Shown in pieces: positions 833 to 57,792 of a DNA stretch of 64,000 bases; the first letter of the stretch is position 1; the number at the start of each line of letters is the position of its first letter. The translations under genes and the position numbers were made by a program. The DNA is from Octopus bimaculoides (lineage: Eukaryota): the NCBI RefSeq assembly GCF_001194135.2, contig NC_068989.1:70507185-70571184 (forward strand), written 5' to 3'. The notes under the pieces are model-generated. The model worked only from the letters and a program-made list of their open reading frames with translations, had not been told where the DNA came from and did not search any database.

Positions 833-856
833 CTAACAAAGAAATGAATTCTTCAG
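833..856 (-). CDS. MTSS1: Candidate 24-nt microexon (AEEFISLL), phase 1-1
   Basis: CTAAC branch point and pyrimidine tract ttgttctctctctgaccttttacag|; in frame with no stop; weak donor TAG|GTTGTT. Confidence 0.45.
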   Translation of the reverse strand: MKNSFLC

Positions 857-1572
857 CTGTAAAAGGTCAGAGAGAGAACAAATTGTTAGGAAACAGAGAT
901 CAAATTATGGAGAGGAGATATACAATAAGATTGAAATAAATATATTGAGAAATATTGAAAGCTTACAACAGAACCATGAACATAATATTAGTAAGTTAAA
1001 TTTTTCAAAAAAAAAAAAAAAAATTCTACACAATAAGCATTAATAAACACAGTTATGTTAATTATTAACCAACTAATTAAATGCCAATGCAAAATAGTTT
1101 GAAGTTAAATGCTTAATTAATGATAATTTTAAAATATTAGGGTTAATAAAAATATTCGATCAGGATTGAAGAATCCAAGATAATGGTCAATTCTAATACT
1201 TATTAATTTGTTGAAATTAGGTTCTCCAGACTTCTTAGTATTCCCGAGATTCATTTCCATTTGCAGAGAATAGTCTTGGTGTCCTGAAGGAATGCTTTAG
1301 GATGGTGATTTGTTCTATTGTCAGGGTCACCTGAGCTTTTTAAAGCACCAATAACTTGTTAGGGACTGAAATGTGAAATATCTTCTTGCCTTCAAGAGAA
1401 TAGCCAATCACTAGGATATTTGTAATACCCTGTTTCTTCAATCTTCTTGTACAGTAATAATGATGAGGGCTTTAATTGTCCGCTTTAATTGTCCGCTTTA
1501 ATTGCCACTTCATGACTGAAGCTTGTAAGTTTAACAATAATACTTCTAATTACTAATTCTTTCTAATTTTAG

Positions 1573-1741
1573 CATCATCATCAGCATCATCATCATCATC
1601 GTTTAACGTCCGCTTTCCATGCTAGCATGGGTTGGACGATTTGACTGAGGACTGGTGAAACCGGATGGCAACACCAGGCTCCAGTCTAATTTGGCAGAGT
1701 TTCTACAGCTGGATGCCCTTCCTAACGCCAACCACTCGCAT
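1573..1741 (-). mobile_element. Retroposon family D (RTE-tail-like, (ATG)n tail), 3' part
   Basis: catcatc-gtttaacgtccgctttccatgctagcatgggttgg...ggatgcccttcctaacgccaaccact recurs at several sites in the window. Confidence 0.7.
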
Positions 1742-1952
1742 AAGCCCAGCAATTTTGAGAGGAGGGGGGGGGGACAAGTTGATTAAAATGACTTCAATAT
1801 TTGACTGGTACTTCATTTTATTAACCTCAGAAGGATGAACGGTAAAGTTGACTTTGGCAGAGTTTGAACTTAGAACATAAAGAGCCAGACAGAGGAAATG
1901 GTGCTAAGCAATTTTTTCAATGCACTAATGATTGCACCAGCTCACTACCTTT
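1742..1952 (-). mobile_element. tRNA-derived SINE family A copy
   Basis: Shared core ggtac..ttttat.gacc..gaaggatgaa.ggcaaagttgac..ggcagaatttgaact, seen about 20 times in the window. Confidence 0.8.
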
Positions 1953-2774
1953 TTAATAAGTAACGAATACAAAGATTATAAATTATATTCTTAACATGTC
2001 CTTTAAGATGGTTTTCTTTTACATATTGGGGTATAAAGTTAGCTTACATCACTTTAGCATTCAGAATTCTTTGTCAAGCATAATGCTTGTTTATTCCCAC
2101 TGTTTTGAATTAATCATGCATTATTTTGTACCTTGAAGATTTCAATGATGAGTTTGTATATTTTTAGAATGACATTGCAGCACAGGCATAAGAGGTTGGA
2201 TCTGGTCAGTTTTAACATAAAACAGATAGAATATTATGGCTGGATTAAATGCTAAAGGGTTGAGAAGAAACTGGTTGTATTTTGTTGAATGATTATATAT
2301 TTGTATCTATCATAGTTCAGAGATTATCAAGTTGATAAATAAGCCAGACATTGTTATTTCAACAAGTACTGAATCTGTTAGTCATATTACTTGAAGAACA
2401 ACTGTTTTTTTTCTTTTTTGTAATTAGTAATTATTGATTATTAATCTTATTTTTGTCTTCGTACATTAAGAAAGGAACCTATGTACGTCAAAACTGTAGC
2501 AGAAATCAAAGATGAAGAGATTATTTGAGTAATAAATATTAAGGCATAACTGAAACAGGGAACTGGAATGGTGTTCTAGATATTGATAATTGTCTTCACA
2601 TTAGGAAAATGATTTAACTGATGAAGCTGTCTAATTAATAAGAAATTGATATCTTTGCAGTCACAAAACTGGTAAGAATGGCCCAAAGTATTGACTGAAA
2701 TATCAGTGAATAAGCAACTTTTGTTTCATTTGTTTATCACACTCAATATAAATGAATTACAATAAAAGATTTGA

Positions 2775-2806
<32 letters not shown>

Positions 2807-3319
2807 AGGTTAATGTTAGTAATTAGTCATACAACATTTATTGAATTTAATCTAAATTCAAAATCAATACAAAAAAAAAATGTGCAAATAGACATTTATA
2901 GAAAAACAAACAAAAAACACATTTAAATATCTAAATCGTTTTTTGTAAAAGTGAGGGGTGATTATCAACAGGTGGCAACATTGGGAGTGTACATAGACAT
3001 CACATGATCTCTAGAAACTATAAGGAGATAAAAAAATTAGCTGCAAAATCAAGCAAATAAAGTGGTTTCACCTCATTAGTATTGTTTTGTATATTGCTTG
3101 TATGTTAAGGATTGAACATACAAAATCATTATTTAGTTGTTAATTAGGATATTTCTAAAAATAACAAATGTTGATCAGCACAACATTTTTGGGTTAATTA
3201 TTGAAGAAACAATCAAATTTAGAGTAAACTACTTTAAGCTTTACAGATATTTAAGAACATCACAAAGTTCAATTGAAACTGCTGTGTGAAATGGAGCAAA
3301 ATTCCTTCTGCACTCATGC

Positions 3320-3520
3320 CTGTGCTACATGAACTGCACTTGTGCCAGTAACACATGGGAGGCACCTGTGCTGGTAGCATGTAGAAAGCACCCAGCACAC
3401 TCTGTAGAGTGGTTGGTATTAAGAAAGGCATCGAACCATAGAAACCATGCCGAAACTGACAATTGGAGCCTGGACAGCTCTCAGGTTGGCTAGCTTCTGT
3501 CAAATCCATGCCAAAACTTT
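3320..3520 (+). mobile_element. Retroposon family D copy
   Basis: gagtggttggtattaagaaaggcatc...gtagaaaccatgcc...ttctgtcaaatccatgcca; reverse complement of the copy at 1573-1741. Confidence 0.6.
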
Positions 3521-4439
3521 TGTTTTTCAATTTTTGATTGTTAAATAGTGCTGAAACCTAACAGAATGCTAACTTGGTTAACCACTTTACTTCCCTGGTG
3601 GTTTATCAAATAAAAAACCTGTGAGTAAAGTTAATAAAACAATTGGTGGTGGTAGTGATGGGATAAATAAAAAAAAGCTGTGAAAAAGCATGAAAGTCTA
3701 AATGGTAATAGAAAAATGTTGGAGGGTTAAAAGTTAATGTGGAAACATGGAAGAAAAAACCAACAAAATGGAACAAAATGAAAGGACAAAAGCATTGAAT
3801 CATGCTTATTGCTTGGGTAAAAGCATATAAAAAACGTGTTTAAATTGAAACAGTAAACACACACAAAAGGAAAAAAAAAGCCAGCACAATAAACCATGAT
3901 TAGGATACAGGAGAGAGAAAAAAAAGCAAAAACAATGGGAGTTACAAGTTTTTATAAAACATGACAGCCTTATGCAAAAAGGTAAATATTTGCATTAAAA
4001 ATTGTTCATTTACATTAGAACTTAGTTAAAACAAAATGATTTCAGAGAAAAAAGAGAGAACATTCATTTTTTAAAAACATTTTTAAGTAAAAAAAAAAAA
4101 AAAGTTTCCTTGTTTAGCGTTATTATCATGATATGGACTAAATACTATTATATGATAAATTTATTTGATATATGAAAGTGAAAATACGTGCTATATATAG
4201 AGGTCTAACCCCACCATAGCTGTTCTCAAGCATGGTTGAAAAAGGAGGAGGGTGGTAAGCATAGGGTTAACAGTGCATCACTATCAAATTTCTATCTACA
4301 TGGCTGTTGAAACTAGTCTTGGTAAGGGGAAGTAATCCTCAGAGACTGCATATGAAGCAATGTAGTGTAAGCAGAAAGGAAGCTACAATGCGGAGCAACT
4401 GTCTTGCATCAAGGACAACCAGATGATCGAGAACAAGGA

Positions 4440-4615
4440 ACAACAGGACCTGCTCAGAACCAGACCCCAAGGCAGACCAAAATCAACAAGGAGAATGTCT
4501 ACAGAAGTTGTAGTAGTGAAAGACCACTACAACTGCAATCCATTACCAGAGATCGAGACAGATGGAGATATCTTGTCCAAGTCCTATGCTTCACATGGAG
4601 TCAAAAAGAATTAAA
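4440..4615 (+). mobile_element. RTE-clade LINE 3' end fragment
   Basis: Broken translation RPQGRPK...ITRDRDRWRYLVQVLC matches the RTE C-terminal pattern GRP..W..A.DR..WR.LV.ALC. Confidence 0.55.
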
Positions 4616-4847
4616 GGAGAGAGAGAGAGAGAGAGGTCTATCATTGGTGATGTATGGCTGTATACATGGGTTAACTGGTGGTGTCTGGGTGTTTAGAAGT
4701 GTACCATTGGTGTTGTATGGGTGTATGGAGGTGTATTACTAGTTACCCCAGGTATCTATGCTTCATGATGTAATGTGCTTTGGAGATGTTGATAGTAAGC
4801 ACTGGGGAGATGAAAGGGAAGGTTAGGAACTAGTGCTGGAACAATGA

Positions 4848-5090
4848 AAATGAAGATCAGTGACAAATGCTAGAGAAATGAAAGTGAAAGTTAGTGACAA
4901 ATGGAGGTTAAGGTCAGTGACAAATGCTAGAGAAAAGAAGGTGAAGGTCAGTCATATGCTCTTAGATGATGGTGAAAGCAAAAGACAGTAACAACCACTG
5001 GAGAGATGCTGAAAGTAAAAGTAACAAGCACGAAAGAGACACTGAAGGGAGAAGTAAGTTAGAAAGCTGTGAAGGTGAAGGTCACCAACA
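4848..5090. repeat. Degenerate purine-rich minisatellite (gtcagtgacaaatgctagagaaa.gaa.gtgaa units)
   Basis: agtgacaaatg occurs three times and gaaggtgaaggtca twice. Confidence 0.6.
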
Positions 5091-5269
5091 AGCTTTATTC
5101 TGTGAGGTATCACGATGGAGGCCAAAATGTAATTATGCTGTGATTTGTGAAATGCCAGAGCAATGAAGTGGGTTTTCTGGAAGATGGAAACTAGTTGATA
5201 AATTGTTGCTAATAACAAAGATTTAAGCTTCTTTTAAAAGGATTTAAATTTAAAAAAAACAAAAAAACT

Positions 5270-5424
5270 GCAGGAGTGGGTGTGTAGTAAGAAGTTTGCT
5301 TCCCAAGCACATGGTTCCAGGTTCAGTCCCACTGCGTAACACCTTGGGAAAGTGCCTTCTATTATAGCTTTGGGCCAACCAAAGCCTTATGAGTGGATTT
5401 CGTAGATTGGAAACTAAAAGAAGA

Positions 5425-5460
<36 letters not shown>

Positions 5461-5688
5461 AGTATGTATGTATATGTGTGCATTTGTGTCTGTGTTTGTC
5501 TCCCCACCATCACTTGACAACCGATGTTGGTGTTTTTATGCCCCTGTAACTTAGCAGTTCTCCAAAAGAAACCGATAGAATAAGTACAAGGCTTACAAAG
5601 AATAAGTCCTGGGGTTGATTTGTTTGACTAAAGGTGGTGCTCCAGCATGGCTGTAGTCAAAAGACTGAAACAAATAAAAGAGTAAAGA
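5270..5688 (+). mobile_element. tRNA-derived SINE family B (CORE-like), full length with internal (TA)n
   Basis: A-box-like gtgggtgtgtagt, B-box-like ggttcagtccc, core accttgggaaagtgccttct, 3' end gactgaaacaaataaaag. Confidence 0.8.
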
Positions 5689-5719
5689 GTATTGGAATTC
5701 TAAGACTGAGAACATAAAT

Positions 5720-6090
5720 GCAGGCATGGCCAAGTAGTTAAGATTTCAGGATCAGTTCCACAGCATGGCACCATGGGTAACTGTCTTACTATAGCCCTCA
5801 GTTAGCCAAATTCTTGTGAGTGTATTAAACAGAAACTGTAAGAAACCCATTGTATAATATATATACATATATATTTTGTGTGTCTCCTTGCCTTGACATC
5901 ACACAATGGTTGTAAACAAGTGTTACCATAGCACAAGTGGTGTTAATTGTTTCCATTCCTCTGTGAAAATATGTCTGACCACCTTGCTTGAAATTGGATG
6001 AGGGCTGGTAACAAGGACAACTGACCATAGTAAAACTGCTATCTGCTTCAACCAATATTCCATCTGATCCATGCAGGTGTGGAAAAATGG
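5720..6090 (+). mobile_element. SINE family B variant with a different tail
   Basis: Degenerate B head followed by ttgacatcac...ggaaaaatgga, a tail also seen at 62630-62850. Confidence 0.55.
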
Positions 6091-6120
6091 ATAGTAAATT
6101 AATAATAGTGCACAATAAAT

Positions 6121-6333
6121 TAATTTCAAATTCTGGCACAAAGTCAGCAATTTCAGAAGGAGTTAAGTCAATTATGTTGACTGCCCAGTGTTCAACTGGT
6201 ATTTATTTTACTGACCCCAAAAGGATGAAAGGCAAAGTTAACCTTGGCAGAATTTGAATACAGAACATAGACAGATGAAATGCTGCTAAGCATTATGCCC
6301 AGCATGCTAACAATTCCCCCAGCTCACTGCCTT
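6121..6333 (-). mobile_element. SINE family A copy
   Basis: Family A core present. Confidence 0.8.
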
Positions 6334-6384
6334 AATGGTGTATGATATTTTATTAGCTGAAAAATATATGGAGGACTTCCATAT

Positions 6385-6597
6385 TCTTTTCTACTCTAGG
6401 CACAAGGCCTGAAATTTTGGGGGAGGGGGCCAGTCGATTAGATTAACCCCAGTGTGCAACTGGTACTTAATTTATCAGCCCTGAAAGGATGAAAGGCAAA
6501 GTCGACCTCGGTGGAATTTGAACTCAGAACAAAGACAGATGAAATACTGCTAAGCATTTTGCCTGGCATGCTAACGTTTCTGCTAGCTTGCTGTCTT
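6385..6597 (-). mobile_element. SINE family A copy with a perfect 15-bp TSD (ggaggacttccatat at 6370-6384 and 6598-6612)
   Basis: The TSD and a near-complete element are both read directly. Confidence 0.9.
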
Positions 6598-7725: not shown

Positions 7726-7737
7726 TATGTGTGTGTA

Positions 7738-7775
<38 letters not shown>

Positions 7776-8324: not shown

Positions 8325-8453
8325 CTGCCGTGGATGCAGGCCGCTTATTTACCACCTCGGCCTTGTAGGCACTGACCATATCGCTGTTGTTACGAGGAAT
8401 GGTGAAGTATTTGTCGCAGTCACAGCTGCCCTCCGTGGGCGTTAGATCAAGGT
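8325..8453 (-). CDS. MTSS1: MTSS1-like exon B (DLDLTPTEGSCDCDKYFTIPRNNSDMVSAYKAEVVNKRPASTA)
   Basis: Acceptor tgtttacag|, donor GCAG|GTGTGT; 129 nt, phase 1-1; matches the MTSS1 motif KSSTIPRNSDISQSYRRMFQAKRPASTAG. Confidence 0.93.
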
Positions 8454-16163: not shown

Positions 16164-16184
16164 CTGAATTTTTCATATTTCCCT
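16164..16184 (-). CDS. MTSS1: Candidate 21-nt microexon (EGNMKNS), phase 1-1
   Basis: Long U tract ttttctttcttgaaag| followed by a strong donor CAG|GTGAGA; in frame between exons C and B. Confidence 0.65.
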
Positions 16185-17490: not shown

Positions 17491-17941
17491 NNNNNNNNNN
17501 NNNNNNNNNNNNNNNNNNNNNNNNNNNNNNNNNNNNNNNNNNNNNNNNNNNNNNNNNNNNNNNNNNNNNNNNNNNNNNNNNNNNNNNNNNNNNNNNNNNN
17601 NNNNNNNNNNNNNNNNNNNNNNNNNNNNNNNNNNNNNNNNNNNNNNNNNNNNNNNNNNNNNNNNNNNNNNNNNNNNNNNNNNNNNNNNNNNNNNNNNNNN
17701 NNNNNNNNNNNNNNNNNNNNNNNNNNNNNNNNNNNNNNNNNNNNNNNNNNNNNNNNNNNNNNNNNNNNNNNNNNNNNNNNNNNNNNNNNNNNNNNNNNNN
17801 NNNNNNNNNNNNNNNNNNNNNNNNNNNNNNNNNNNNNNNNNNNNNNNNNNNNNNNNNNNNNNNNNNNNNNNNNNNNNNNNNNNNNNNNNNNNNNNNNNNN
17901 NNNNNNNNNNNNNNNNNNNNNNNNNNNNNNNNNNNNNNNNN
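17491..17941. other. Assembly gap (N run)
   Basis: N run. Confidence 1.
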
Positions 17942-19521: not shown

Positions 19522-19554
19522 CGTTAGCAACCTGAGCTGTCAGTGATACTGAAT
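19522..19554 (-). CDS. MTSS1: Candidate 33-nt small exon (DSVSLTAQVAN), phase 1-1
   Basis: Acceptor tattatctatacag|, strong donor ACG|GTAAGA; in frame with no stop between exons C and B. Confidence 0.65.
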
Positions 19555-22104: not shown

Positions 22105-22294
22105 CTCCAGATGCTATAGTATCCTCAGAACCTGCTGGGGTAGAATTCATTGTTCCATATCCACTAGAACATTGCAGAGATGTACGGCTTGTTGTTGTGA
22201 CAGCATTAGTTGTCGGTTCTTCATAATGGGACGTTAGAGCAGCAGTGGTAGCTTCTAGTTCTTTAATGGCTAATTCAAGACTGTTTTGCTGGGC
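22105..22294 (-). CDS. MTSS1: MTSS1-like exon C (AQQNSLELAIKELEATTAALTSHYEE...RTSLQCSSGYGTMNSTPAGSEDTIASG)
   Basis: Acceptor tttggtcag|, donor GAG|GTAAGG; 190 nt, phase 0-1; matches the MTSS1 motif RDSLQCSSGYSTQTTTPCCSEDTI. Confidence 0.93.
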
Positions 22295-26169: not shown

Positions 26170-26315
26170 GCAATGATATTGTGGATGGTAGTTTATTTAT
26201 TGACCCCAGAAGGATGAAGCAAAGTTGGCCTTGCTGAAATTTGAACTCAGACCATATAGAAAGCCAGAACAAATACTGCAAAGCATTCTATCCAATGCTC
26301 TAATAACTCTGCCTT
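26170..26315 (-). mobile_element. SINE family A partial copy
   Basis: ttattgaccccagaaggatgaagcaaagttggcc...tttgaactcag. Confidence 0.65.
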
Positions 26316-30218: not shown

Positions 30219-30698
30219 NNNNNNNNNNNNNNNNNNNNNNNNNNNNNNNNNNNNNNNNNNNNNNNNNNNNNNNNNNNNNNNNNNNNNNNNNNNNNNNNNN
30301 NNNNNNNNNNNNNNNNNNNNNNNNNNNNNNNNNNNNNNNNNNNNNNNNNNNNNNNNNNNNNNNNNNNNNNNNNNNNNNNNNNNNNNNNNNNNNNNNNNNN
30401 NNNNNNNNNNNNNNNNNNNNNNNNNNNNNNNNNNNNNNNNNNNNNNNNNNNNNNNNNNNNNNNNNNNNNNNNNNNNNNNNNNNNNNNNNNNNNNNNNNNN
30501 NNNNNNNNNNNNNNNNNNNNNNNNNNNNNNNNNNNNNNNNNNNNNNNNNNNNNNNNNNNNNNNNNNNNNNNNNNNNNNNNNNNNNNNNNNNNNNNNNNNN
30601 NNNNNNNNNNNNNNNNNNNNNNNNNNNNNNNNNNNNNNNNNNNNNNNNNNNNNNNNNNNNNNNNNNNNNNNNNNNNNNNNNNNNNNNNNNNNNNNNNN
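30219..30698. other. Assembly gap
   Basis: N run. Confidence 1.
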
Positions 30699-31996: not shown

Positions 31997-32375
31997 GTAT
32001 CATGAAAATATGCCTAACATAAGTTAATGCTGTTGGATCAAACACCTGCTATACTTAAAATCTGCAGTTAGAGAATGAACAAGATTACACACTATTTAAG
32101 GAACATTTCCTCAAGAAAGAGTGGCTTCAATTTTTTTGTCAATAGCAAAGACATTAGCATGCAAGAAGGAAAAAAAAAAAAGGCAAGATATTTGTGGTGA
32201 CCCTGGTGAAATGCGCTCAAAGCAGACGTTGGTGCAGCTGCTGCAATGTGTTGTTAGCCCAGCAATATATATAAGTAATAGTAGTAGTAACATGACTAAA
32301 TGATTAAACAACACTGAAGAGGAAAAGAAGGAGGAGGAGGAGGAGATTGTTAAGTATGGAGGTGATCAGTCTTGC

Positions 32376-32504
32376 CTGGTTAGAACCCTTTTGACTTGTA
32401 ACCGAATCTGAGTCGGTGTCATCATCGTAGTCGCTGTGTAGAGCAGCAGTACAGTTTTCTAAGTCCCTGATTGCCTCCTGAATGTCGAGCAAATCCAACA
32501 AAGA
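32376..32504 (-). CDS. MTSS1: MTSS1-like exon D (SLLDLLDIQEAIRDLENCTAALHSDYDDDTDSDSVTSQKGSNQ), probably with a GC-AG donor
   Basis: Acceptor ctctcccacatgcag|, donor CAG|GCAAGA; 129 nt, phase 0-0; the peptide resembles the start of exon C. Confidence 0.75.
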
Positions 32505-33254: not shown

Positions 33255-33450
33255 TAATAATTCTGACACAAGGCCAGCAAATTTGAGGGGAGGGTACAAG
33301 TTGATTACATCAATTAGTACTTGTTTTATCGACTCCAAAAGGATGGCAGGTACAGTTAACTTTGGTAGCGTATGCGCTCAGAACAAGTGGCAAAAAAATG
33401 CTGTTAGGCACTTTGTGCAGTGTTGTAATAATTCTGCTAGCTCACCAATA
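33255..33450 (-). mobile_element. SINE family A copy
   Basis: Family A core present. Confidence 0.7.
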
Positions 33451-34286
33451 ATAATAATAATAATAATAATGATAATAATCTGCATTTACTGTATTTTTTT
33501 TGTTATTACTTTTCAAATATATCCTCAAATCATTTAAAATTGAGTTCTCATTATTCTAATGACTCAACTTATTAATCCACTTTATCAAATTGATAATAAA
33601 CCTGATCCTAATTTATCGGAACCAATTGCTAAAAGCCAAGATACCAAAATACTGTAAATTAATTTACTTAGCAATTTGCTTTTTTTTTTGTCTCCAATAA
33701 CCATGATTTGATTCCATGATTTAAGATTGAGATCAAGAAAAGAAGACAAAAAAAACCCAAAAAACAACAAAGAACAAAACAATTGTTTCAAAACATTAGT
33801 GAACTACATCCAATGACTGAGATTTCAAAATAAAATGATATTGATTGACAGAAAATTTTTCTGAAAATATAAAATTCAGAATGCCTTTTGGCAAAAGAAA
33901 ACAGGAGAAATGAAGGTAAAAGCAACTACTATAGTTTTTACTGCTGCTGGAAAATAGCTGAAGTTAAATCAAGCAGAGAAACGTTGAGTAAATTCTTTTA
34001 TTCACACACACACTATGCGCTATATGAATTACTAAGCTGTATCTTTATGATGTTAACTGAATGGTATGTAGATAGAAATAATAAGAGTTAATATTCCTAA
34101 TCTAAACTTCGGTGGCAGTAGTAGTGGTGGTGGTGGTGGTGGATCTCTGTTTGACAACGAGTACACAGTTGTTTGATCTACTGAATTACCTGCTCCTGAA
34201 TTAATGTATATGTAACTGAGTTTTCTACAGACACATACCTCCTTAAATGCAATTCTCAGGTGGAATCAGCATAAGTGTGTGACGAC

Positions 34287-34625
34287 GTTGTACCTTTCCA
34301 ATTACAAGTACAATCCACCTGACAGGCTTCTGTACAGTCTCCGTCTTCCCTATTTCCCTCACAAGGTATGGGTCGATGCAAGGCTATAGAAAAATCACAA
34401 TGTCCAAAATATCACGCAGTGGAATTGAATCTACAATGACAAGGTTGTACCTTTCTCATTACAGGTACAATCCACCTGACAGGCTTCTGTACAGTTTCTG
34501 TCTTTCCTATTTCCCTCACAAAATAAGCGTCAATGCAAGGTTATACAAAATTATATATGTTCAAGATATCACACAGTGGGATTAGACGTGCAACCTTATT
34601 CTTCTTAACCACTCAGCCTACTGCA
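34287..34625. repeat. 157-bp tandem duplication inside a reverse family-B-like SINE
   Basis: gttgtacctttc...gtacaatccacctgacaggcttctgtacagt starts at both 34287 and 34444. Confidence 0.85.
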
Positions 34626-35899: not shown

Positions 35900-36500
35900 T
35901 GGTTTCTAATTTTGGAACAAGGCCAGCAATTCTAGCAGGAGGTAGTTACTTGTTTATATTGTTCCCAGAGCCCAACTAGTAATTATCTTATCGATCCCAA
36001 AATGACAGAAGGCAAAACAGATATTTGAATCCAGAACATAAAGAGTGAGAACTGCTTAGCATTTTGTCCAATGCTCTAACAATAATCCGTTCTACTGTAG
36101 GCACAAGGCATGAAATTTGGAGGTGGGGGCAGGGTAAACCAATTACGTTAACCCCAGTGTTTCACTGGTACTTAATTTATTAAGCCGAAAGGATGAAAGG
36201 CAAAGTCGACTTCAGTGGAATTTGAACTCAGAACATAGCAGCAGACGAAACACCACTAAGCATTTCATCTGGTGTGCTAACCATTCTGTCTTAAATACTG
36301 ACAATAATAACATTTATTTGTAATTTAGTTAAAGGGTCAGAAGTTTTAAAGAGAGGCGATACATCAATACCAGCCATACTAGTCCTTTATTTTATTCCCT
36401 TTGGAGTGATGAAAAGCAAAATTCTCCTCAGTGGAATTTGAACTCAGAATGAACAAATACATTTTTTTCTTTCTTGACACTTCAGCAATTCAGCCAATTT
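35900..36500 (-). mobile_element. Stack of three family A SINEs
   Basis: Cores at about 35900-36080, 36085-36290 and 36330-36500 (the last degraded). Confidence 0.7.
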
Positions 36501-39289: not shown

Positions 39290-40206
39290 TTATGGTGACC
39301 AAATGTTTGTGTTCACATAAGCTCAGTCCCTCCATCAGAGAGACATTACGTGCACAGGTGCACGGCATGCCATGTATCAGATGATGAAATGATTGCAGAG
39401 AAATGTGAAACAAAGTGCTTTGCTCAAGAACGCAACACCCAGCATGGGAATCAAAACCATGATCTCACAATCATGAGTGCAACACCCTAACCACTTAGCC
39501 ATATGTTAATAATAATCCTTTCTACTATAGTCACAAGGCCTGAAATTTTGGGGGAGGGGGATAGTCGATTACATCAACCCCAGTTTTCAACTGGTACTCA
39601 TTTCATTGATCCCAAAAGAATGAAAGATAAAGTTGACCTTGGTAGAATTTGAACTCAGGACAAAAAGACAGACAAAATGCCACTGAATATTTTGCTTGGC
39701 ATACTAATGGTTCTGCCAGCTTGCTGCCTTAATTGTAATAATAACAACAATAAGAATAATAATTCCTTCTACAATAGGCATAAGGCCTGAAATTTTGGAG
39801 GGAGGAGCTAGTCAATGCTAGTGCTCAATTGGTACTTTATTTCATCAACCTGGAAAGGATGAAAAGCAAAGTCGACCTTGGTAACGTTTGAACCTGGAAC
39901 ATAAAACCAGAAGAAATGCCACAAAGCAATTTATCTGGAATGGTTATGGTTCCACCTGTTCACTGATAATGATGATGATGATAATAATAATAATAATAAT
40001 AATAATGGTTTCAAATTTTGGCACAAGGCCAGCAAGTTTGAAGGAAGAGCGGGTAAGTTGATTATATCAACCTCAGTGTTCAACTGGTACTTATTTTATC
40101 GGCCCTGAAAGGATGAATGGCAAAGTCAACCTCGGAGGAATTTGAACTCAGAACATATAGACAAAATGCTGACAAGCATTTCGCCTGGCGTGCTAACGAT
40201 TCTACC
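39290..40206 (-). mobile_element. One family C SINE followed by three stacked family A SINEs separated by (AAT)n
   Basis: A copies at 39511-39731, 39761-39965 and 40007-40206. Confidence 0.85.
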
Positions 40207-40457: not shown

Positions 40458-40624
40458 CTGTGACTTCTGCTCTTTACTATCTTTCTGCTCACAAGGAGAT
40501 TGGGTTTGGGATTTACTCATCAGTTTGGATTCTCGCTGTTCTTTGCGCTGTTCTTGCTTGCGTTGCTTTTCAGCAGCCATATGAGCTAGGTCTGTCATGT
40601 TCACATAGGTCGGTTGTTGACCAC
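40458..40624 (-). CDS. MTSS1: MTSS1-like exon E (GGQQPTYVNMTDLAHMAAEKQRKQEQRKEQRESK...KSQ)
   Basis: Poly-T tract and tcaaag| acceptor, donor CAG|GTGCAG; 167 nt, phase 1-0, open frame compatible with exons D and C. Confidence 0.8.
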
Positions 40625-40650: not shown

Positions 40651-41021
40651 NNNNNNNNNNNNNNNNNNNNNNNNNNNNNNNNNNNNNNNNNNNNNNNNNN
40701 NNNNNNNNNNNNNNNNNNNNNNNNNNNNNNNNNNNNNNNNNNNNNNNNNNNNNNNNNNNNNNNNNNNNNNNNNNNNNNNNNNNNNNNNNNNNNNNNNNNN
40801 NNNNNNNNNNNNNNNNNNNNNNNNNNNNNNNNNNNNNNNNNNNNNNNNNNNNNNNNNNNNNNNNNNNNNNNNNNNNNNNNNNNNNNNNNNNNNNNNNNNN
40901 NNNNNNNNNNNNNNNNNNNNNNNNNNNNNNNNNNNNNNNNNNNNNNNNNNNNNNNNNNNNNNNNNNNNNNNNNNNNNNNNNNNNNNNNNNNNNNNNNNNN
41001 NNNNNNNNNNNNNNNNNNNNN
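40651..41021. other. Assembly gap 26 nt upstream of the exon E acceptor
   Basis: N run. Confidence 1.
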
Positions 41022-42375: not shown

Positions 42376-42553
42376 NNNNNNNNNNNNNNNNNNNNNNNNN
42401 NNNNNNNNNNNNNNNNNNNNNNNNNNNNNNNNNNNNNNNNNNNNNNNNNNNNNNNNNNNNNNNNNNNNNNNNNNNNNNNNNNNNNNNNNNNNNNNNNNNN
42501 NNNNNNNNNNNNNNNNNNNNNNNNNNNNNNNNNNNNNNNNNNNNNNNNNNNNN
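42376..42553. other. Assembly gap
   Basis: N run. Confidence 1.
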
Positions 42554-45646: not shown

Positions 45647-45852
45647 NNNNNNNNNNNNNNNNNNNNNNNNNNNNNNNNNNNNNNNNNNNNNNNNNNNNNN
45701 NNNNNNNNNNNNNNNNNNNNNNNNNNNNNNNNNNNNNNNNNNNNNNNNNNNNNNNNNNNNNNNNNNNNNNNNNNNNNNNNNNNNNNNNNNNNNNNNNNNN
45801 NNNNNNNNNNNNNNNNNNNNNNNNNNNNNNNNNNNNNNNNNNNNNNNNNNNN
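45647..45852. other. Assembly gap
   Basis: N run. Confidence 1.
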
Positions 45853-49261: not shown

Positions 49262-49600
49262 GAAATAAATGAAACAAATTATGAGTTATTATTATCATCA
49301 TACAAGAGAAATAATAAATATTTCNNNNNNNNNNAGAGTGACGTTTTTGCTGTTATGCTAAGCAAAATAAATGCATAAATTTTTTTTAAATGGTGAAAAA
49401 AAAACAAAACAAAACAAAATCTGTAGAATATTTACAAACTACTAAATAAACAACAAATGCTGTTTCTACGGAAACACAAAAGTTGAAACAGGAAAGACAA
49501 CTTTTCAACTATCTTCATCACAAAGAAAAAAAAAAAAAAATGCCAATCACTCAAGAAATTGAGAATTTAATATTAATTTGATGAAGATGATAATAATAAT

Positions 49601-50040
49601 AATCCTTTCTATTATAGACACAAGGCCTGAAATTTGGAGGAATGGGACAGTCAATTACATCAACCCTAGTGTTTCACTGGTACTTAATTTATTGACGCTG
49701 AAAGGATAAAAGGCAAAGTTGACCTTGGTGGAATTTGAACTCAGAATGTGAGGAAAGACAAAATGCCATTAAGCATTTCACCCTGCATGCTAACGATTCT
49801 GCCAGCTTGCCACCTTAATAAAAATAATAACGATTTCAAATTTTGGCACAAGGCCAGGAACTTTAGGGGAAGGGTAAACCAATTACACTGACCCCCAGTA
49901 CTCAACTGGTACTTATTTTACTGATGCCAGAAGGATGAAAGGCAAAGTTGACTTTGGAATTTGGAATCAGAATGTAAAGACAGATGAAATGCTGCTAAGC
50001 ATTTTTCCCAAAGTGCTAACAATTTTGTCAGCTCATCACC

Positions 50041-50090
<50 letters not shown>

Positions 50091-50530
50091 CCTTTCTGCT
50101 ATAGGCACAAAGCCTGAAATTTGGAGGAGGGGGATAGTTGATTACATCGACCCCAGTATTTGACTGGTACTTGTTTTATTGATCCCGAAAGGATGAAAGG
50201 CAAAGTTGACCTTGTTTGAATTTGAACTCAGAATGTGAAGATGGATAAAATGCCACTAAGCATTTTCCCCAGCATGCTGATGATTCTGAAAGTTTGCTGT
50301 TGTAATAATAATAATAATAATAATAATCCATTATACGATAGGCACAAAGCCTGAGATTTTGGGGGAGGGGAACAGTTGATTACCCCCAACAAGTTGACTG
50401 GCACTTTTTTCATCGACCCTGAAAAGATGAAAGGCAAAGTTGACGTCGACGGAATTTGAACTCAGAATATGAAGACAGACGAAATGCTGCTTAGGCTTTT
50501 TCCTGGAATGTTGATGATTCTGCTAGCTCA
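49601..50530 (-). mobile_element. Head-to-tail stack of four family A SINEs separated by (AAT)n
   Basis: Copies at 49601-49816, 49830-50042, 50090-50300 and 50327-50530. Confidence 0.9.
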
Positions 50531-51614: not shown

Positions 51615-51623
51615 CGTAAAGTG
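51615..51623 (-). CDS. MTSS1: Candidate 9-nt microexon CACTTTACG (xLY), phase 1-1
   Basis: About 45 nt of pyrimidine tract ending ttgttcttag|, donor ACG|GTAAAT; preserves the frame into exon E. Confidence 0.55.
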
Positions 51624-51895: not shown

Positions 51896-51897
51896 AC
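51896..51897 (-). other. 3' splice site followed 2 nt later by a perfect 5' splice site (tgtctttgtgtAG|GT|GTAAGT): 2-nt exon or recursive-splice-like site
   Basis: Read directly from the sequence; UGC at -21 and -17 relative to the AG. Confidence 0.35.
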
Positions 51898-52135
51898 CTA
51901 CACAAAGACAGGCAGGCAAATAAATAATTTTGTGGTTTGCACAGTTTAGATAGTGGTTACAAAAAGGTCAGTGAATATTATTTGTACAAGTGGTTACAAG
52001 GATCAGCGAAGGTCTCATGAATTTCCGGATTGTCAAAAGAATTTGGTTACAATATCATAAGACAATGGAAAATAAATGTTTATTTGGAATAATGAAGGAA
52101 CAATTAGAAAGAAGGATTAAATATATATACATATA

Positions 52136-52179
<44 letters not shown>

Positions 52180-52765
52180 TATATAGCAACGAATTTACTT
52201 TGAAGCTGATATGTTTATATAAATATATAATTGTGTATATTGTTTTACATCAGCACACTCGGGAGAAACAAAACGTTAATGATACACAAAAGTATTTGTC
52301 TTTTGCAACATTTTGGAAAAGAGAAAAAAAAAAAGTTACTGTAAGCAGTTGGATATTAACAGTGAATAAAAAAAAATTTCTAGTTAAACTGATAATATAC
52401 ACTTTGTTAATCCATTTTTGAGATTATTGAAGAAAAAAAAACAATCACATCTATTTACTATGGGGAAAAAAAAAAAAAAAAAAAATTATACTTCTTTTTT
52501 GTAATGGGAAGAAAGAATTCGTTACATTCTTTTGCACCTACTGGGAATATAATAAGCATTTGCCAACTTAAAAAAAGAACCCAAGAAAATATCTAATAGC
52601 TTATAAACAGAAATACATCTAAGAATTTTCCAGCAAACTGTTTACTTAAATTCAAGGTGTTTTATTTATATATTATTCATTTTACTCTTACAATAGATAT
52701 AAAAAATATAACTATAACCTGTTAAAGTGTAAGGATTAAAGTATATATATCCACCAGTAACAGTT

Positions 52766-53180
52766 CCAATTGGGAAGGGCATCAAACAGGGAGACACCAT
52801 ACCTTTAAACCTCTTCTTTGCATATCTAGAAATGGTCATCAGAGGTATTGACTGGACATGTGGAGTTAACATGAATGGTTAATACCACACCTCTGATTTT
52901 CAGATGGCATTGTACTCATCACTGAAACTACAGGTCAGCTGCAGATCATGCTGACAGAGCTGGACATCCATTGCTCAACATATGTCTTAAAATGAACTGC
53001 ATGAAAACAAAATACATGCAATCCAAAGATGTAGCACAAGGCTGAATAGAGGTGGGAAGCAATGAAATTGAGGAGGTAAAGGGGTATGTGTACTTAGGGC
53101 ACACAGTGAATATGCACCAAGATATGGAAGCTAAAATCAGAAATCCCAGAGAGAATAAGAGCAAGATGGAAGACATTTAA
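52766..53180 (+). pseudogene. RTE-clade LINE reverse-transcriptase fragment
   Basis: Broken translation GKGIKQGDTI..LF, DGIVL, LQIMLTEL, KMN..KTKYM, YVYLG. Confidence 0.8.
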
Positions 53181-53274
53181 CCTAAATAAAGGATGTGCTC
53201 CAAACGAAGCTGGGCAAGACAATATGTACCAAACTCTTCAGGACACAGCTTTGGGCAAAAAGTCCAAGAAGTAA

Positions 53275-54060
53275 TCATTAAAAAGTCAATCAGAGCCATT
53301 TCAAAGGACCTCAAGGTTTCAGAATGCACGATCAGAAGAGTTGTTCATGAGGACATCTGGTACAAGATGTATGTGATGCAGGGGGGATAGTTTATGTTGG
53401 ATGTCACAAGAGAGAAAAGTTCGATCTGTACAAAGTGCTTGCTAAACAAATTTAAAAATCAAGGTTAGAATGCTTTGGTTGTTTTCCAATGAGAAAAACT
53501 ACAATCAGGACCAAAAGGCAAACCAAGGACAAGACACATAGCTATGCAGACTTGAATGAAGTTCCAACAGTCAGTCATTCCCAGCAGTTCTGGGAGTCAT
53601 TAGCAACAAGGGAGATGTCATGCCTCCTCATTTTTTTTTACAGGGATTAAGAGTCAATACCACTATCTATATAGGTATTGGAGAAAGTTGTGAGGCTCTT
53701 GATAGACAGAGTACACAACAGAAGATTATGTCTTCCAACAAGACTGCAAGGTGAGAACAATCCAAGCATGGATGCATGCCAGTCTCCATGATCGTATTCT
53801 CCCAGACACATGGCCTCCTAGCTCACCAGACCTCAATCTACAAGAGTATTTATTATGTATGGGATGTAGTCAAGAGAGGGGTCAGTTAACATCCCCATAA
53901 CACCATGCAGTCTCTTATGTCCACCATAACCAGCACTATGTCCAAAATTGATAAAGATTATCTGATTCAGACACATCATTGCTTCCAACTCTCTAATAAA
54001 GCAGCCACTGAGGCTAACAGCGGATTCATTAGAAAGGTGTAATAAAAGGGTTCTCAAGAT
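53275..54060 (+). pseudogene. Tc1/mariner-superfamily transposase remnant (maT/DD37D-like)
   Basis: KSIRAISKDLKVSECTIRRVVHED, LGVISNKGDVMPPHF, YVFQQD and WPPSSPDLN..Y.VW..V...HPHNT across frameshifts. Confidence 0.75.
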
Positions 54061-54916
54061 TGTTTGTACCAATTAGTTTTCAAATACAGCTTTTCTTTGA
54101 TGAGCTATGTGTCTTTTTCTAAATTGATACAAATGACCTCAAAAACACTGATGCACTGTGTGTATGTATGTATATACAGATACACACACACACACATATA
54201 TACATATATATCTATTATATGTCTTGTAATTTAAAAGAAAGACCTCCAGTTAAAAGTGATTTTAAATTCATATTCTTACAGACAGCTGTATAGCCAAAAT
54301 ATATCAAGAAATAAATGAGCAATATCTGAAGACTAAAAATGACACAAAGAGTAAAATTACGCGCTTTAAACCTAATAGAGCATATGATACAGGTAACTGC
54401 CTTCTTAAAAAAAACACAAAGGAAAAAACCCAACTAAGTACCTTAGTTTAAGAGGGATACATTTTTCTTATCTAACAGTTATTCCCATAAATCAAGCCAG
54501 GTACTACATCAAAAAGGGATCTTCAATATACAAGTTATTGTAGCTATGTACTGTTGATAAAAAACTTAAAGACATTTGATAAAGACACAAAAATCACTTC
54601 TAAAGCAAGAATGCTTACAGCTGATTTCAATAAAAATTTCAGATTATGAATCTACTTTAGAAATTATTACAGGATTGTAGCTGTTGGTGGTGGTAGTGAG
54701 GAAATTTAGTGTTGGAAAAGGGAGTTTTTAATAGGAGGTGCTTGTTAGCAAGTTGCTAAGTTAAACGAAACATGGCAACAAATCAAGCATGTAATCCGGA
54801 AAAACACTTGATAACCACTACAACAGGGTGGTAGTAACAAAACAAGTAGTGAGGTGGTCTGGTTGCTGTTGTCACAGCAACAGGTTGCTGTAGAGGAAAG
54901 TGGACTGAGAACTCAC

Positions 54917-54955
54917 CTTGGAAGAGAAAGCTCATGAGGCGATCCCGGGATATAG
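54917..54955 (-). CDS. MTSS1: Candidate 39-nt exon F; frame ambiguous (AISRDRLMSFLFQ in phase 1, CYIPGSPHELSLP in phase 2)
   Basis: CT-rich tract ending ccgaag|, strong donor CAAG|GTGAGT; GC-rich island; two of the three frames are open. Confidence 0.65.
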
Positions 54956-56461
54956 CTTCGGGGAGAGATAGAGATAGAGATAGAAAGATAGGTAGGTAGG
55001 TAAGTGGAGATGCAGATGGAAGATAACGCAAATAACAAAATATTGACAGAAAGTTAATCTTAAAACCAAACAAGAAGACCATGTGGCAAACATTTTTAGA
55101 GCAAGAGAGAAAGAGAGAGAGAGGAGAAGGAGGGGAAAAGGAAACAGTGGTTCAAAAGACGGTGAAGAATCTACTAGTTAAAACCTACAAGAGATGGTGA
55201 AAAGGAGAGACAAAGGAGTGTAGATAGAGACAGATAGAAATAAGGAAAAAAGGGTGCAAGAAAGTGAGTGTTACAAGGGTATGGGGTAGGAGGAGGAATC
55301 AGAAAGATAAACAAATATTCAAAAGAGCATGTTTCTACAAATATCTTCATTCAGTTTCACTAAGAATACTGAATGATAAAAAAAAGATGAAAGAAACACG
55401 TATATACAGATAAGAAAAAAACAAAAACAAAAAAAAAACAAATCTCCATATTTACTTTCAAATAATAATGGAATTATTTTAATTTCAACGATTTCTCTTA
55501 TATTCTTTTTTTAATATCAGTTTTACTGGAATGTTTACAAGAATTTCCATGCAAAACTATGAAACAGAAAGGAAACTGTTGACATGGGAACACTACAGGG
55601 GAAGGTGTTGGTGATAATTGACATTCATAACAGATCCAGTAGACTCAATCAAAATCACTGTCTGTCAGTCTATCTCTCGAATTGAATCCAGACAAGGCAT
55701 CAGTCAGTCATACAAAAGGATCAACTAACAAGGATCAGGTGCTAATAATGGTGCAACAATGGAACGTAACCCAAAGACATGCTGAAGAGGAGGTTCTTTC
55801 TTTTGGAAAATGCATGCATCTGGAGACAAATTCCAATGTATCAGTCTTTGTTAGCGAAATCATTGATTTGGAGAATAAGTACTTAAGAAATAACTGAGAA
55901 GAATCAGGCGGGAAAAGAATATATATAGAGAGAGAGAGAGAAAGAGAGAAACTAGAAACAGAAATTTAAAAATACATGCTTGAAATGTAATTATACATGC
56001 ATACATACACATATGCATGTATGTATGCACACAAACTCTAAGACAAACATGTTTACAGGAATGATTTTAATATATAATCACAAATTAGTCAAGCCTCTTT
56101 CATTACAAAGAAGAGCTATTTGAAAGAATTGAAAATTATATTAATAACAATAATAATATTAGTAGGAATAAAGCAGCTACTGCCTGTCCCTGGTCCCACC
56201 CCCACCCACAGAAAAATAAAGAATAAAAAACTTAATAATAATAATAATAGAAGGTATAGACGCTTTACTGTGCCAAAGTGTTTTATTACATGGCAGACGG
56301 AAAAAAGTAGTGTTGTTATGAGCAGGAGTGTGCTGATGATAATGATAGTAGTGGTAGTAGTAATAGTGATGTGCTGTTTTTACTGCAAGAAAGAAAGGTA
56401 GCAATATTATTTCCAATGGCTCAAAAATGGTTACATCTCATCTGTAAATAACTTGTGACAT

Positions 56462-56464
<3 letters not shown>

Positions 56465-56535
<71 letters not shown>
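56465..56535. repeat. (AG)n microsatellite
   Basis: Read directly. Confidence 0.95.
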
Positions 56536-56630
56536 AAAAAAAATCCAAATTAATGCAAGGCCCAGTCCCTTCCATGCAGTTATAGAACTACATTCATCTA
56601 TAGAAAATTTAACAGTTCTTGATTCCCCAT

Positions 56631-56661
<31 letters not shown>

Positions 56662-56720
56662 AAAGAGAAGGACAGATAAATCTATTTAACATACTGCTCT
56701 CTAACATTGAAGTATGCACT

Positions 56721-57225
56721 CAACCTTGGCAGAATTTGAACTAAGAACGTAGCAGCTGACAAAATACCACTAAGCATTTTGTCTAGCATGCTAACAATTC
56801 TGCCAGCTCACTGCTTTTTTAATAATGATAATAATAATAATAACAACAATAATAATGATATTGTCATGTACTGTTTATCTTGATATGAGATCACCATGTT
56901 GCACACATATGGTTGTGATGCATGTACCTTATCAGACAGGTAGTCATGATGGGTATACTGGGCTTTGTATATTTTACCCCAGTGTCACTTTGAGGGCATG
57001 CACTACTCTCTCACGCAATAATGATAATTGGCACAAGGTCAGTAGTTTTGGGAGAGGAACTGAGTCAGTTATATCGACCCCAGTGCTCAACTGGTATTCA
57101 TATTATAAACCTCAGTAGGATGAAAGGCAAAGTTGACTGGTGGAATTTGAACTCAGAACATAGCTAGACAAAATACTGCTAACAATTTTGGCAAGCATGC
57201 TCACAATTATGCCAGATTACTGCCC

Positions 57226-57268
<43 letters not shown>

Positions 57269-57470
57269 TCTAATTTTGGCAAAAACCTAGCAATTTCAAG
57301 GGGAGGGGTGGCAAGATAATTACATTGACCTCAATTCTTTACATTATTTTATTCACCTGAAAGGTGGATGGGCACGGTTGACCTCAGCAGGAATGGAACT
57401 CAGATCATAAAGAACCAATAAAAATACTGCCAAGCATTTTATCCAATTATTCTGCCAGTTAGCCACTTAA
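56721..57470 (-). mobile_element. Cluster of three family A SINEs with (AAT)n spacers
   Basis: Copies at 56721-56815, 57018-57226 and 57270-57470. Confidence 0.8.
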
Positions 57471-57752
57471 ATAATAACAACAGAAAAGCCAGATAATGGT
57501 TTTTAATCTGAGTCGACAGATTACATCTAATACCCCAAGAATACTTTCCTGCTTATCAAATTTCCCCTCACAGGGTTTTGGCTGATTCTAGACTATGGTT
57601 GTAGACATTTGCCCAAGTTATTTTAACCTAATGTCTCTATGAGATGAGATGACCAAGAGAAATGAAACTGCCATTGAAGAATAAGTGAACAGCAAATGAG
57701 AAAAAAAACAACAAAAAAAATAGAATAAAAGAACCGCAATGGTGAAGTGTAC

Positions 57753-57792
57753 CAGTGAGAAAAGCCATGCTTATTAGCCCATATGTCGTCAG
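57753..57792 (-). CDS. MTSS1: Candidate 40-nt exon (ADDIWANKHGFSH or LTTYGLISMAFLT depending on phase)
   Basis: Strong acceptor tatttgttgcag|, weaker donor CTG|GTACAC; GFSH recalls NGFSHY in vertebrate MTSS1. Confidence 0.45.

What the first reader, a model, noticed from the sequence alone, without database searches (positions are those of the whole stretch)
833..57792. A battery of candidate microexons spread through an octopus MTSS1/MIM gene
Four exons of 9, 21, 24 and 33 nt, plus one of 39 nt, each have a pyrimidine tract and AG and a GT donor. Their lengths are divisible by 3, and each is stop-free in phase 1, the phase of the flanking constitutive exons; only the 39-nt exon has a second possible frame. 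They cluster around the conserved SSGY-SEDT and TIPR-KRPAST motifs. Microexon programmes are an established neural feature of bilaterians (Srrm3/4 eMIC-type regulators), and vertebrate MTSS1 has a neural microexon in its IMD. A combinatorial set in the disordered tail of a cephalopod I-BAR protein would, as far as I know, be undescribed. These exons are too short for the ORF track and are often missed by annotation.
Basis: partly seen in the sequence, partly recalled or inferred. Interest (0 to 1): 0.75.

Follow-up and report, generated by a model that had tools for sequence, protein, structure and literature searches.

The report
Two annotated short exons, rest chance
The window holds the rear two-thirds of an octopus MTSS1 (I-BAR) gene; two of the five proposed tiny exons (33 and 39 nt) are real exons already in a public gene model, and the proposed 9-, 21- and 24-nt ones look no better than the dozens of chance look-alikes in these introns.

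Summary
The gene call is right. An MTSS1/MIM-type gene runs on the minus strand. Seven coding exons in the window splice into a 472-aa open frame that is 469/472 identical to residues 462-933 of a public 990-aa protein (P0006, full IMD domain).

Two reader-type candidates are exons in that model: 39 nt (54955-54917, AISRDRLMSFLFQ) and 33 nt (19554-19522, DSVSLTAQVAN). Both are octopus-side insertions compared with other lophotrochozoan orthologues. They are already annotated, are longer than the 3-27-nt microexon definition, and have no recorded skipping isoform.

Several sit in a SINE family that carries its own pseudo-acceptor. About 19 kb of orthologous intron from a divergent cephalopod shows no conserved island. 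The best unsupported candidate is 21 nt at 16184-16164.

All assembly gaps are intronic and interrupt no coding sequence of the model. RNA-level inclusion could not be tested. Low interest.

The parts
54917..54955 (-). 39-nt coding exon, phase 1-1, encodes AISRDRLMSFLFQ. It is a lineage-specific 13-aa insertion just before the conserved PTYVNM motif.
   Evidence: Matches P0006 residues 462-474 (12/13; Q465 in P0006, R here). Acceptor ctctccccgaag|C preceded by a long CU-rich tract; donor G|gtgagt. Absent from 6 of 7 other orthologues in alignment A1. Not in a dispersed repeat.
40458..40624 (-). 167-nt exon (phase 1 to 0): GQQPTYVNMTDLAHMAAEKQRK...
   Evidence: tblastn of P0003 and P0006; splice sites. 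The acceptor lies 27 nt from assembly gap 40651-41021.
32376..32504 (-). 129-nt exon (phase 0 to 0) with a GC donor: SLLDLLDIQEAIRDLENCTAALHSDY...
   Evidence: The junction GSNQ|AQQNS in P0006 requires CAG|gcaaga.
22105..22294 (-). 190-nt exon (phase 0 to 1) carrying the SSGYGTMNSTPAGSEDTIASG motif
   Evidence: Most conserved block in alignment A1.
19522..19554 (-). 33-nt coding exon, phase 1-1, encodes DSVSLTAQVAN. It is inserted between the SEDT and TIPR motif exons.
   Evidence: Identical to P0006 residues 637-647. Open only in phase 1. Weak acceptor ttatctatacag|A, donor G|gtaaga. The octopus protein is longer than its orthologues at this point. Not in a repeat.
8325..8453 (-). 129-nt exon, phase 1-1, carrying TIPR...KRPASTAG. 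It is a cassette in other lophotrochozoans.
   Evidence: 85% nt identity to L001 10115-10304, with conserved splice sites. Skipped in P0001 and P0003.
1..729 (-). Terminal coding exon (phase 1 start), cut by the window edge: LPVSKPP...KPPPPVRRSSS...
   Evidence: The true acceptor is ttgttgtag|GT at 729, not the start of the long ORF at 832.
16164..16184 (-). Best unsupported candidate: a 21-nt AG...GT segment that would add EGNMKNS between the 33-nt exon and E8
   Evidence: PWM acceptor 2.1 + donor 7.7 = 9.8, equal to the 39-nt exon. Open in phases 1 and 2. Not in P0006. The +21 isoform is absent from the collection. No counterpart in L001.
57753..57792 (-). Segment that starts at the finding's upper bound; rejected as an exon
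   Evidence: ttgttgcag|CTGAC...CACTG|gtacac is 40 nt, so it is not 3n and would shift the frame. Absent from P0006.

Best explanation
The window contains the 3' two-thirds of an ordinary octopus MTSS1/MIM (I-BAR) gene on the minus strand.

Seven coding exons are present. Two are short symmetric exons (39 nt and 33 nt, phase 1-1) that are already part of a public gene model. They add 13 and 11 residues to poorly conserved stretches of the disordered linker. The first sits just upstream of the PTYVNM motif. The second sits between the SSGY-SEDT block and the TIPR-KRPAST block. Both are insertions relative to other lophotrochozoan orthologues.

Inferred, not shown: they act as spacer or linker peptides between conserved short linear motifs, and they may or may not be alternatively included.

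The further 9-, 21- and 24-nt 'microexons' are most likely chance AG...GT pairs. AT-rich, T-biased, SINE-laden introns produce such pairs in large numbers.
For: Gene and exons:
- Splicing the seven exons gives 472 aa with no stop, 469/472 identical to P0006 residues 462-933.
- P0006 has a full IMD domain, E = 3e-77.
- The 33- and 39-nt peptides are in P0006.
- Alignment A1 shows both as octopus-side insertions in variable segments.

Chance level of the pattern:
- PWM candidates number 59 on the gene strand and 56 on the antisense strand; the 3n fraction is 0.34 vs 0.32; phase-open counts are 10/9/10.
- Under the loose rule there are 44 phase-1-open 3n candidates against 37 +/- 7 in block shuffles.
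- Pseudo-candidates at 60552, 57356 and 49697 lie in a SINE family with a built-in CCTTTCATCCTTTCAG|G acceptor.

Conservation:
- In about 19 kb of orthologous cephalopod intron (L001), only E8 and the terminal exon align.
- The best intronic HSPs reach about 30 bits, the same as the reversed-sequence control.
- No candidate has a nucleotide or peptide counterpart.

Isoforms: none that skips the short exons or includes the 21-nt segment is on record.
Against: - No RNA-seq or cDNA data could be reached, so inclusion of any very short exon is untested.
- A lineage-specific microexon would be invisible to the L001 comparison, which involves a divergent species.
- L001 reaches only 10.1 kb upstream of E8, so it does not cover the 33-nt exon's expected position, the rest of that intron, or any intron upstream of E22.
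- At one stricter threshold (summed score >= 5), 12 of 20 gene-strand candidates are 3n (binomial p = 0.013; 10/18 and p = 0.043 without the two real exons). This hint depends on the threshold and is not corrected for multiple testing.
- The 21-nt segment at 16184-16164 has splice sites as strong as a real exon.
- My splice PWMs are rough consensus matrices, not octopus-trained models.
Confidence: 0.8

Rival explanations
1. One reading: a combinatorial battery of five neural, Srrm3/4 (eMIC)-type microexons in the disordered tail of a cephalopod I-BAR protein, largely missed by annotation.
For: - Two of the five are genuine short phase 1-1 exons.
- The vertebrate family hosts tiny alternative exons: a 12-nt exon 7 in the MIM IMD (PMC2064081) and a 9-nt SRRM4-responsive microexon in MTSS1L (PMC7935315).
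- There is a strong 21-nt candidate at 16184-16164 with a UGC at -29.
- There is a weak excess of 3n lengths at one threshold.
Against: - The pattern occurs at chance density.
- The two supported exons are 33 and 39 nt, above the 27-nt limit, and are already annotated.
- No skipping or inclusion isoform is on record.
- Neither model exon has a UGC within 58 nt of its 3' splice site.
- The comparable cephalopod introns show no conservation.
- The candidate at the finding's upper bound is 40 nt and breaks the frame.
Confidence: 0.05
2. The 33- and 39-nt exons are regulated cassette exons, possibly tissue-specific. They would resemble the CNS-specific, lineage-specific exon 12a of mammalian Mtss1, even though only the inclusion form is annotated.
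For: - Both are symmetric (3n, phase 1-1), so skipping keeps the frame. The skipped forms align without gaps to other orthologues.
- Both are lineage-specific insertions in the variable linker, as is mouse exon 12a (PMC2194783).
- The 33-nt exon has a weak acceptor (score 0.3).
- The 39-nt exon follows a roughly 60-nt CU-rich tract, a typical context for PTB-type repression; this is inference from general knowledge.
- The neighbouring 129-nt exon E8 is skipped in transcripts of other lophotrochozoans.
Against: The exact look-up found none of the d33, d39 or d33+d39 forms. There was no transcript evidence either way, and conservation of the two exons in other cephalopods could not be tested.
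Confidence: 0.3
3. One or both short exons are artefacts of automated gene prediction and are not used in vivo.
For: - They are absent from all other orthologues examined.
- LMSFLF is oddly hydrophobic for a disordered linker.
- The 39-nt exon has an unusual aag acceptor.
- Only one model carries them.
Against: - A predictor does not need a 3n exon to keep a reading frame, so inclusion usually reflects transcript alignments (inference).
- Both have good GT donors (scores 8.1 and 4.9).
- Both are intact in two slightly different genome sequences, the window and P0006's source.
Confidence: 0.1

Closest known systems
Mouse/human Mtss1 exon 12a (CNS-specific cassette; Glassmann et al. 2007, PMC2194783)
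   Same: A lineage-restricted, in-frame exon inserted into the evolutionarily variable Ser-rich/disordered linker between the IMD and the C-terminal motifs of MTSS1.
   Different: Exon 12a has RT-PCR evidence for neuron-specific use and alternates with exon 12. The octopus 33- and 39-nt exons have no expression data, lie at other positions in the linker and are not homologous to it.
Mouse MIM/MTSS1 exon 7 (12 nt, 4 aa) in the IMD (Mattila et al. 2007, PMC2064081)
   Same: A very short symmetric alternative exon in the same gene family.
   Different: It lies in the folded IMD, at the distal ends of the dimer, and changes Rac binding. The IMD-coding part of the octopus gene is outside this window, and none of the candidates here is in the IMD.
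Human MTSS1L/MTSS2 9-nt microexon (VastDB HsaEX0040737), SRRM4-responsive (PMC7935315, S17 Fig)
   Same: A true microexon (27 nt or less) in a paralogue of the same family. It shows that the family can host such exons.
   Different: Its inclusion responds to SRRM4 in experiments. No 9-nt segment in this window has any support beyond an AG and a GT.
Bilaterian eMIC (Srrm2/3/4) neural microexon programme (PMC8797185; bioRxiv 10.64898/2026.09.05.749416, which includes Octopus bimaculoides)
   Same: Short, frame-preserving exons in cytoskeleton and signalling genes.
   Different: Defining features were not shown here: length 3-27 nt, neural-specific inclusion, and a UGC-type element close to the 3' splice site. 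The two real exons are 33 and 39 nt and their nearest UGC is at -59 and -78.

Membership tests
MTSS1/MIM subfamily of I-BAR (IMD) proteins | N-terminal IRSp53/MIM homology domain (Pfam PF08397) | tested here: met
   P0006, whose residues 462-933 are 469/472 identical to the window's spliced exons, has an IMD at residues 16-237 (E = 3.1e-77; 259 bits against a cut-off of 26.2). The IMD-coding exons themselves lie outside the window.
MTSS1/MIM subfamily of I-BAR (IMD) proteins | Conserved central linear motifs (PxYVNM, LQCSSGYGTMNSTP-SEDTI, TIPR...KRPASTAG, KPPPPVRRSSS) collinear with orthologues | tested here: met
   Alignment A1 with seven lophotrochozoan orthologues has invariant columns across these blocks. 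tblastn maps them to exons in the window.
MTSS1/MIM subfamily of I-BAR (IMD) proteins | C-terminal WH2 actin-monomer-binding motif | tested here: inconclusive
   Pfam reports no WH2 hit in P0006 at E <= 0.01. The C-terminus (residues 934-990) lies outside the window. Orthologue P0009 ends in a typical LKKT-type WH2.
Microexon (3-27 nt, definition quoted in PMC7935315) | Exon length of 27 nt or less | tested here: not met
   The two segments with exon evidence are 33 and 39 nt. The 9/21/24-nt segments meet the length rule but have no evidence of being exons.
Microexon (3-27 nt, definition quoted in PMC7935315) | Demonstrated inclusion in mature mRNA (junction reads or cDNA) | not testable with these tools
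   No octopus transcript or RNA-seq resource was reachable. The search for homologous proteins returned no cephalopod transcripts. An exact look-up of a +21-nt isoform was negative.
Microexon (3-27 nt, definition quoted in PMC7935315) | High evolutionary conservation of the exon and its flanking intron | tested here: not met
   The L001 introns (10.1 kb upstream and 9.4 kb downstream of E8) show no island above the reversed-sequence control (about 30 bits) and no matching candidate. Coverage is partial and the species is divergent.
eMIC/SRRM4-dependent neural microexon | UGC-containing element close upstream of the 3' splice site, with a strong pyrimidine tract | tested here: not met
   The nearest UGC is at -59 for the 39-nt exon and -78 for the 33-nt exon. 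The unsupported 21-nt candidate has one at -29, upstream of a U-run.
eMIC/SRRM4-dependent neural microexon | Neural-specific inclusion that depends on Srrm3/4 | not testable with these tools
   Requires tissue RNA-seq or perturbation data.

The most novel reading that the evidence does not exclude
The 21-nt segment at 16184-16164 (EGNMKNS) is a genuine, unannotated, octopus-specific microexon. Together with the 33- and 39-nt exons and the 129-nt TIPR-KRPAST cassette, it would form a small set of alternatively included, frame-preserving inserts. These would retune the spacing between linear motifs in the MTSS1 linker, possibly in neurons.
Probability: 0.08. Interest if true: 0.45.

Novelty: already known. 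Interest (0 to 1): 0.12.

Why it matters
If a real combinatorial microexon set existed in a cephalopod I-BAR protein, it would be a modest but useful example of lineage-specific neural splicing in a cytoskeletal regulator, outside vertebrates and insects.

As it stands, the result is mainly cautionary:
- In AT-rich, repeat-laden cephalopod introns, 'pyrimidine tract + AG + 3n + GT + open frame' has no discriminating power. There are about 40 such segments per 57 kb, which equals the shuffled expectation.
- A resident SINE family even supplies ready-made strong acceptors.
- The two short exons that are real were already captured by routine annotation.

Tried and rejected
1. The search for homologous proteins was run twice, with spliced exon queries with and without the short exons. 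It returned only distant mollusc or vertebrate hits and no octopus protein or transcript, although P0006 and P0014 are in the collection. The third search was not spent because the yield would probably be the same.
2. The look-up of encoding contigs for P0006 found no record. The Logan contigs with the E22 orthologue (L002-L007) end about 280 nt past the exon.
3. blastn-short and PAM30 tblastn of all candidates against L001 gave only low-complexity or chance matches. The two that looked interesting were dismissed on inspection: L001 826-844 is a T-run, and L001 5025-5045 'SLSNQVA' is a 25-nt AG-GT segment with an in-frame stop.
4. The 40-nt segment at 57792 was rejected because it shifts the frame and is not in P0006.
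5. The long ORF starting at 832 was rejected as the start of the last exon. P0006 and the phase require the acceptor at 729.
6. I tested whether the two model exons or the 21-nt candidate are exonised copies of a dispersed repeat. No other copies occur in the window, and the SINE consensus does not hit them.
7. ARAGORN found no tRNA in the window.
8. Literature searches found no paper on cephalopod MTSS1 splicing. The supplements of the 2026 preprint that includes O. bimaculoides are not held.


Full report
**What is in the window.** tblastn of distant mollusc MTSS1-like proteins placed conserved exons at about 40.6, 32.5, 22.2 and 8.4 kb, and found a terminal exon that runs off the window start. 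Reading the splice sites gave these exons:

| Exon | Coordinates | Length | Phase | Note |
|---|---|---|---|---|
| E40 | 40624-40458 | 167 nt | 1 to 0 | |
| E32 | 32504-32376 | 129 nt | 0 to 0 | GC donor |
| E22 | 22294-22105 | 190 nt | 0 to 1 | SSGY..SEDT |
| E8 | 8453-8325 | 129 nt | 1 to 1 | TIPR..KRPAST |
| Terminal | from 729 | cut by window | starts in phase 1 | |

**An existing gene model contains two of the five candidates.** An exhaustive HMMER search of 1.84 billion representative proteins returned P0006. It is 990 aa, from NCBI/UniRef, and sits on a 105.9-Mb chromosome-scale record; its name is masked. It carries a complete IMD domain (E = 3e-77).
- P0006 contains AISQDRLMSFLFQ between ...KAVPPPTIP and GGQQPTYVNM.
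- It contains DSVSLTAQVAN between SEDTIASG and DLDLTPTEG.
- These map exactly to a 39-nt segment (54955-54917) and a 33-nt segment (19554-19522). My blind enumeration had already listed both as AG...GT candidates.

Splicing the seven exons at my coordinates gives 472 codons with no stop, 469/472 identical to P0006 residues 462-933. The three differences (Q465R, V886G, A898T) suggest a different assembly or a very close relative. The exon preceding the 39-nt exon is not in the window.

The 39-nt segment is open in phases 1 and 2, and the 33-nt segment only in phase 1.

**Assembly gaps.** All seven N runs lie wholly inside introns, and most are flanked by microsatellite or homopolymer sequence. 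The closest (40651-41021) ends 27 nt upstream of E40. That exon is complete, because P0006 is continuous across the junction. Exon order and strand are collinear with P0006 across six gaps, so the scaffold is consistent at this scale. A tiny unannotated exon hidden inside a gap cannot be excluded.

**Is the pattern more than chance?** No.
- With rough splice PWMs, AG-N-GT pairs of 6-51 nt number 59 on the gene strand and 56 on the antisense strand. The 3n fraction is 0.34 vs 0.32. The 3n candidates are stop-free in phases 0/1/2 in 10/9/10 cases.
Shuffles that preserve local composition give 37 +/- 7. Fourteen candidates have exactly the lengths 9, 21, 24, 33 or 39.
- At one stricter cut (summed score >= 5), 12 of 20 gene-strand candidates are 3n (p = 0.013; 10/18 and p = 0.043 after removing the two real exons). 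This depends on the threshold and is uncorrected. Two of the seven phase-1-open hits lie in phase-0 introns, where phase-1 openness is irrelevant.
- Several attractive candidates (60552, 57356, 49697) are copies of a roughly 200-bp SINE-like family. Its consensus contains CCTTTCATCCTTTCAG|G. There are 19 hits in the window, all on the gene strand.
- The finding's upper bound, 57792, starts a 40-nt AG...GT segment, not a 39-nt one. It would shift the frame and is not in P0006.

**Cross-species test.** P0013 led to L001, 20.5 kb of a cephalopod genome contig (ENA ERZ21867824) centred on the E8 orthologue.
- Only E8 (85% nt identity, splice sites conserved) and the terminal exon (74%) align. The introns are otherwise unalignable.
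- A sensitive intron-to-intron search gave top scores of about 30 bits, the same as a reversed-sequence control.
- No window candidate has a nucleotide or peptide counterpart of the same length. Two marginal hits were dismissed on inspection.

This covers 10.1 kb upstream of E8 and the whole E8-to-terminal intron. It does not reach the expected position of the 33-nt exon, which lies 11.1 kb upstream of E8 in the window. I could not extend the locus, so conservation of the two real short exons in other cephalopods remains untested.

**Nature of the two real short exons.** In an alignment with seven lophotrochozoan orthologues, both fall in variable linker segments where the octopus protein is longer. 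The exon-skipped sequences align collinearly with the others. Neither exon lies in a dispersed repeat. The nearest UGC is at -59 (39-nt exon) and -78 (33-nt exon), so neither shows the eMIC-type signature. The 39-nt exon follows a long CU-rich tract. Exact-sequence look-ups of six hypothetical P0006 isoforms all failed; these skipped the 33-nt exon, the 39-nt exon, both, E8, or the 33-nt exon plus E8, or added the 21-nt candidate. So the collection holds no annotated evidence for alternative use. This is weak negative evidence, since an isoform that differs elsewhere would escape an exact look-up.

Mechanistically, I infer that these are spacer inserts between conserved short linear motifs of the disordered linker. 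Whether they are regulated is unknown.

**Best remaining candidate.** The 21-nt segment at 16184-16164 (EGNMKNS) has a summed splice score of 9.8, as good as the 39-nt exon. It is not repeat-derived and has a UGC at -29. One such high-scoring pair per strand is about what the antisense strand shows. It is absent from P0006 and has no counterpart in L001. I give it under 10% probability.

**Comparison with the literature.**
- Mouse MIM exon 7 is a 12-nt, 4-aa alternative exon in the IMD that alters Rac binding (PMC2064081).
- Mouse Mtss1 exon 12a is a CNS-only, mammal-specific cassette in the variable linker (PMC2194783).
- Human MTSS1L has a 9-nt SRRM4-responsive microexon (PMC7935315).
- Tissue-specific splicing in O. 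bimaculoides has already been surveyed systematically (bioRxiv 10.64898/2026.09.05.749416), but MTSS1 is not mentioned in its text.

Short lineage-specific linker exons in MTSS1 are therefore a known theme, and the two octopus exons are already annotated.

**Verdict.** The 'battery of microexons' interpretation is not supported. Interest is low.

Noticed in passing
window 32368-32376 (minus strand; donor of exon 32504-32376): This exon uses a non-canonical GC donor (CAG|gcaaga). The P0006 junction GSNQ|AQQNS requires it, so this is a GC-AG intron.
   Followed up: partly
window 1764-1883, 6171-6565, 26186-26287, 33267-33415, 36077-36449, 39507-40187, 49590-50505, 56723-57440, 60229-60585: A SINE-like family of about 200 bp, with a B-box-like GAGTTCAAATTCC and an (ATT)n tail. 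It gives 19 hits, all on the gene's (minus) strand and often in tandem clusters. Each copy carries a strong pseudo-acceptor CCTTTCATCCTTTCAG|G. The complete orientation bias is unexplained. ARAGORN calls no tRNA.
   Followed up: partly
window 8325-8453 (exon E8): The whole 129-nt TIPR-KRPAST exon is symmetric (phase 1-1) and is skipped in transcripts of other lophotrochozoans (P0001, P0003: SEDTIASGG|VP/IP...KPPPPVRR). It is a better candidate for regulated splicing in octopus than any of the tiny segments.
   Followed up: partly
window 54944-54946 (codon 465 of P0006, inside the 39-nt exon): The only amino-acid difference within the short exons is here: the window reads CGG (Arg) where P0006 has Gln. 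Two further differences (V886G, A898T) lie in the terminal exon. So P0006 comes from a slightly different genome sequence than the window.
   Followed up: no
window 34280-34426 and 34437-34583: A local tandem duplication of about 147 nt (84% identity) in the E40-E32 intron. It creates paired pseudo-candidates at 34514 and 34357.
   Followed up: no
window 17491-17941, 30219-30698, 40651-41021, 42376-42553, 45647-45852, 59725-60228: Most assembly gaps abut (TA)n/(CA)n microsatellites or a homopolymer run. This pattern is typical of short-read scaffolding breaks and does not suggest missing unique sequence.
   Followed up: yes
L001 15865-16308 (minus strand): In the related cephalopod, the E8-to-terminal intron holds an ORF with a Pfam HTH_48 (mariner-type transposase) hit. 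The window has a weak helix-turn-helix ORF at 53193-53390 (sub-threshold Pfam hits only).
   Followed up: no
tools (versus 27 and 30): the search for homologous proteins did not return P0006 or P0014, although both are cluster representatives in the same collection and share long exact stretches with the queries. Negative results from that tool for close relatives should not be trusted.
   Followed up: partly
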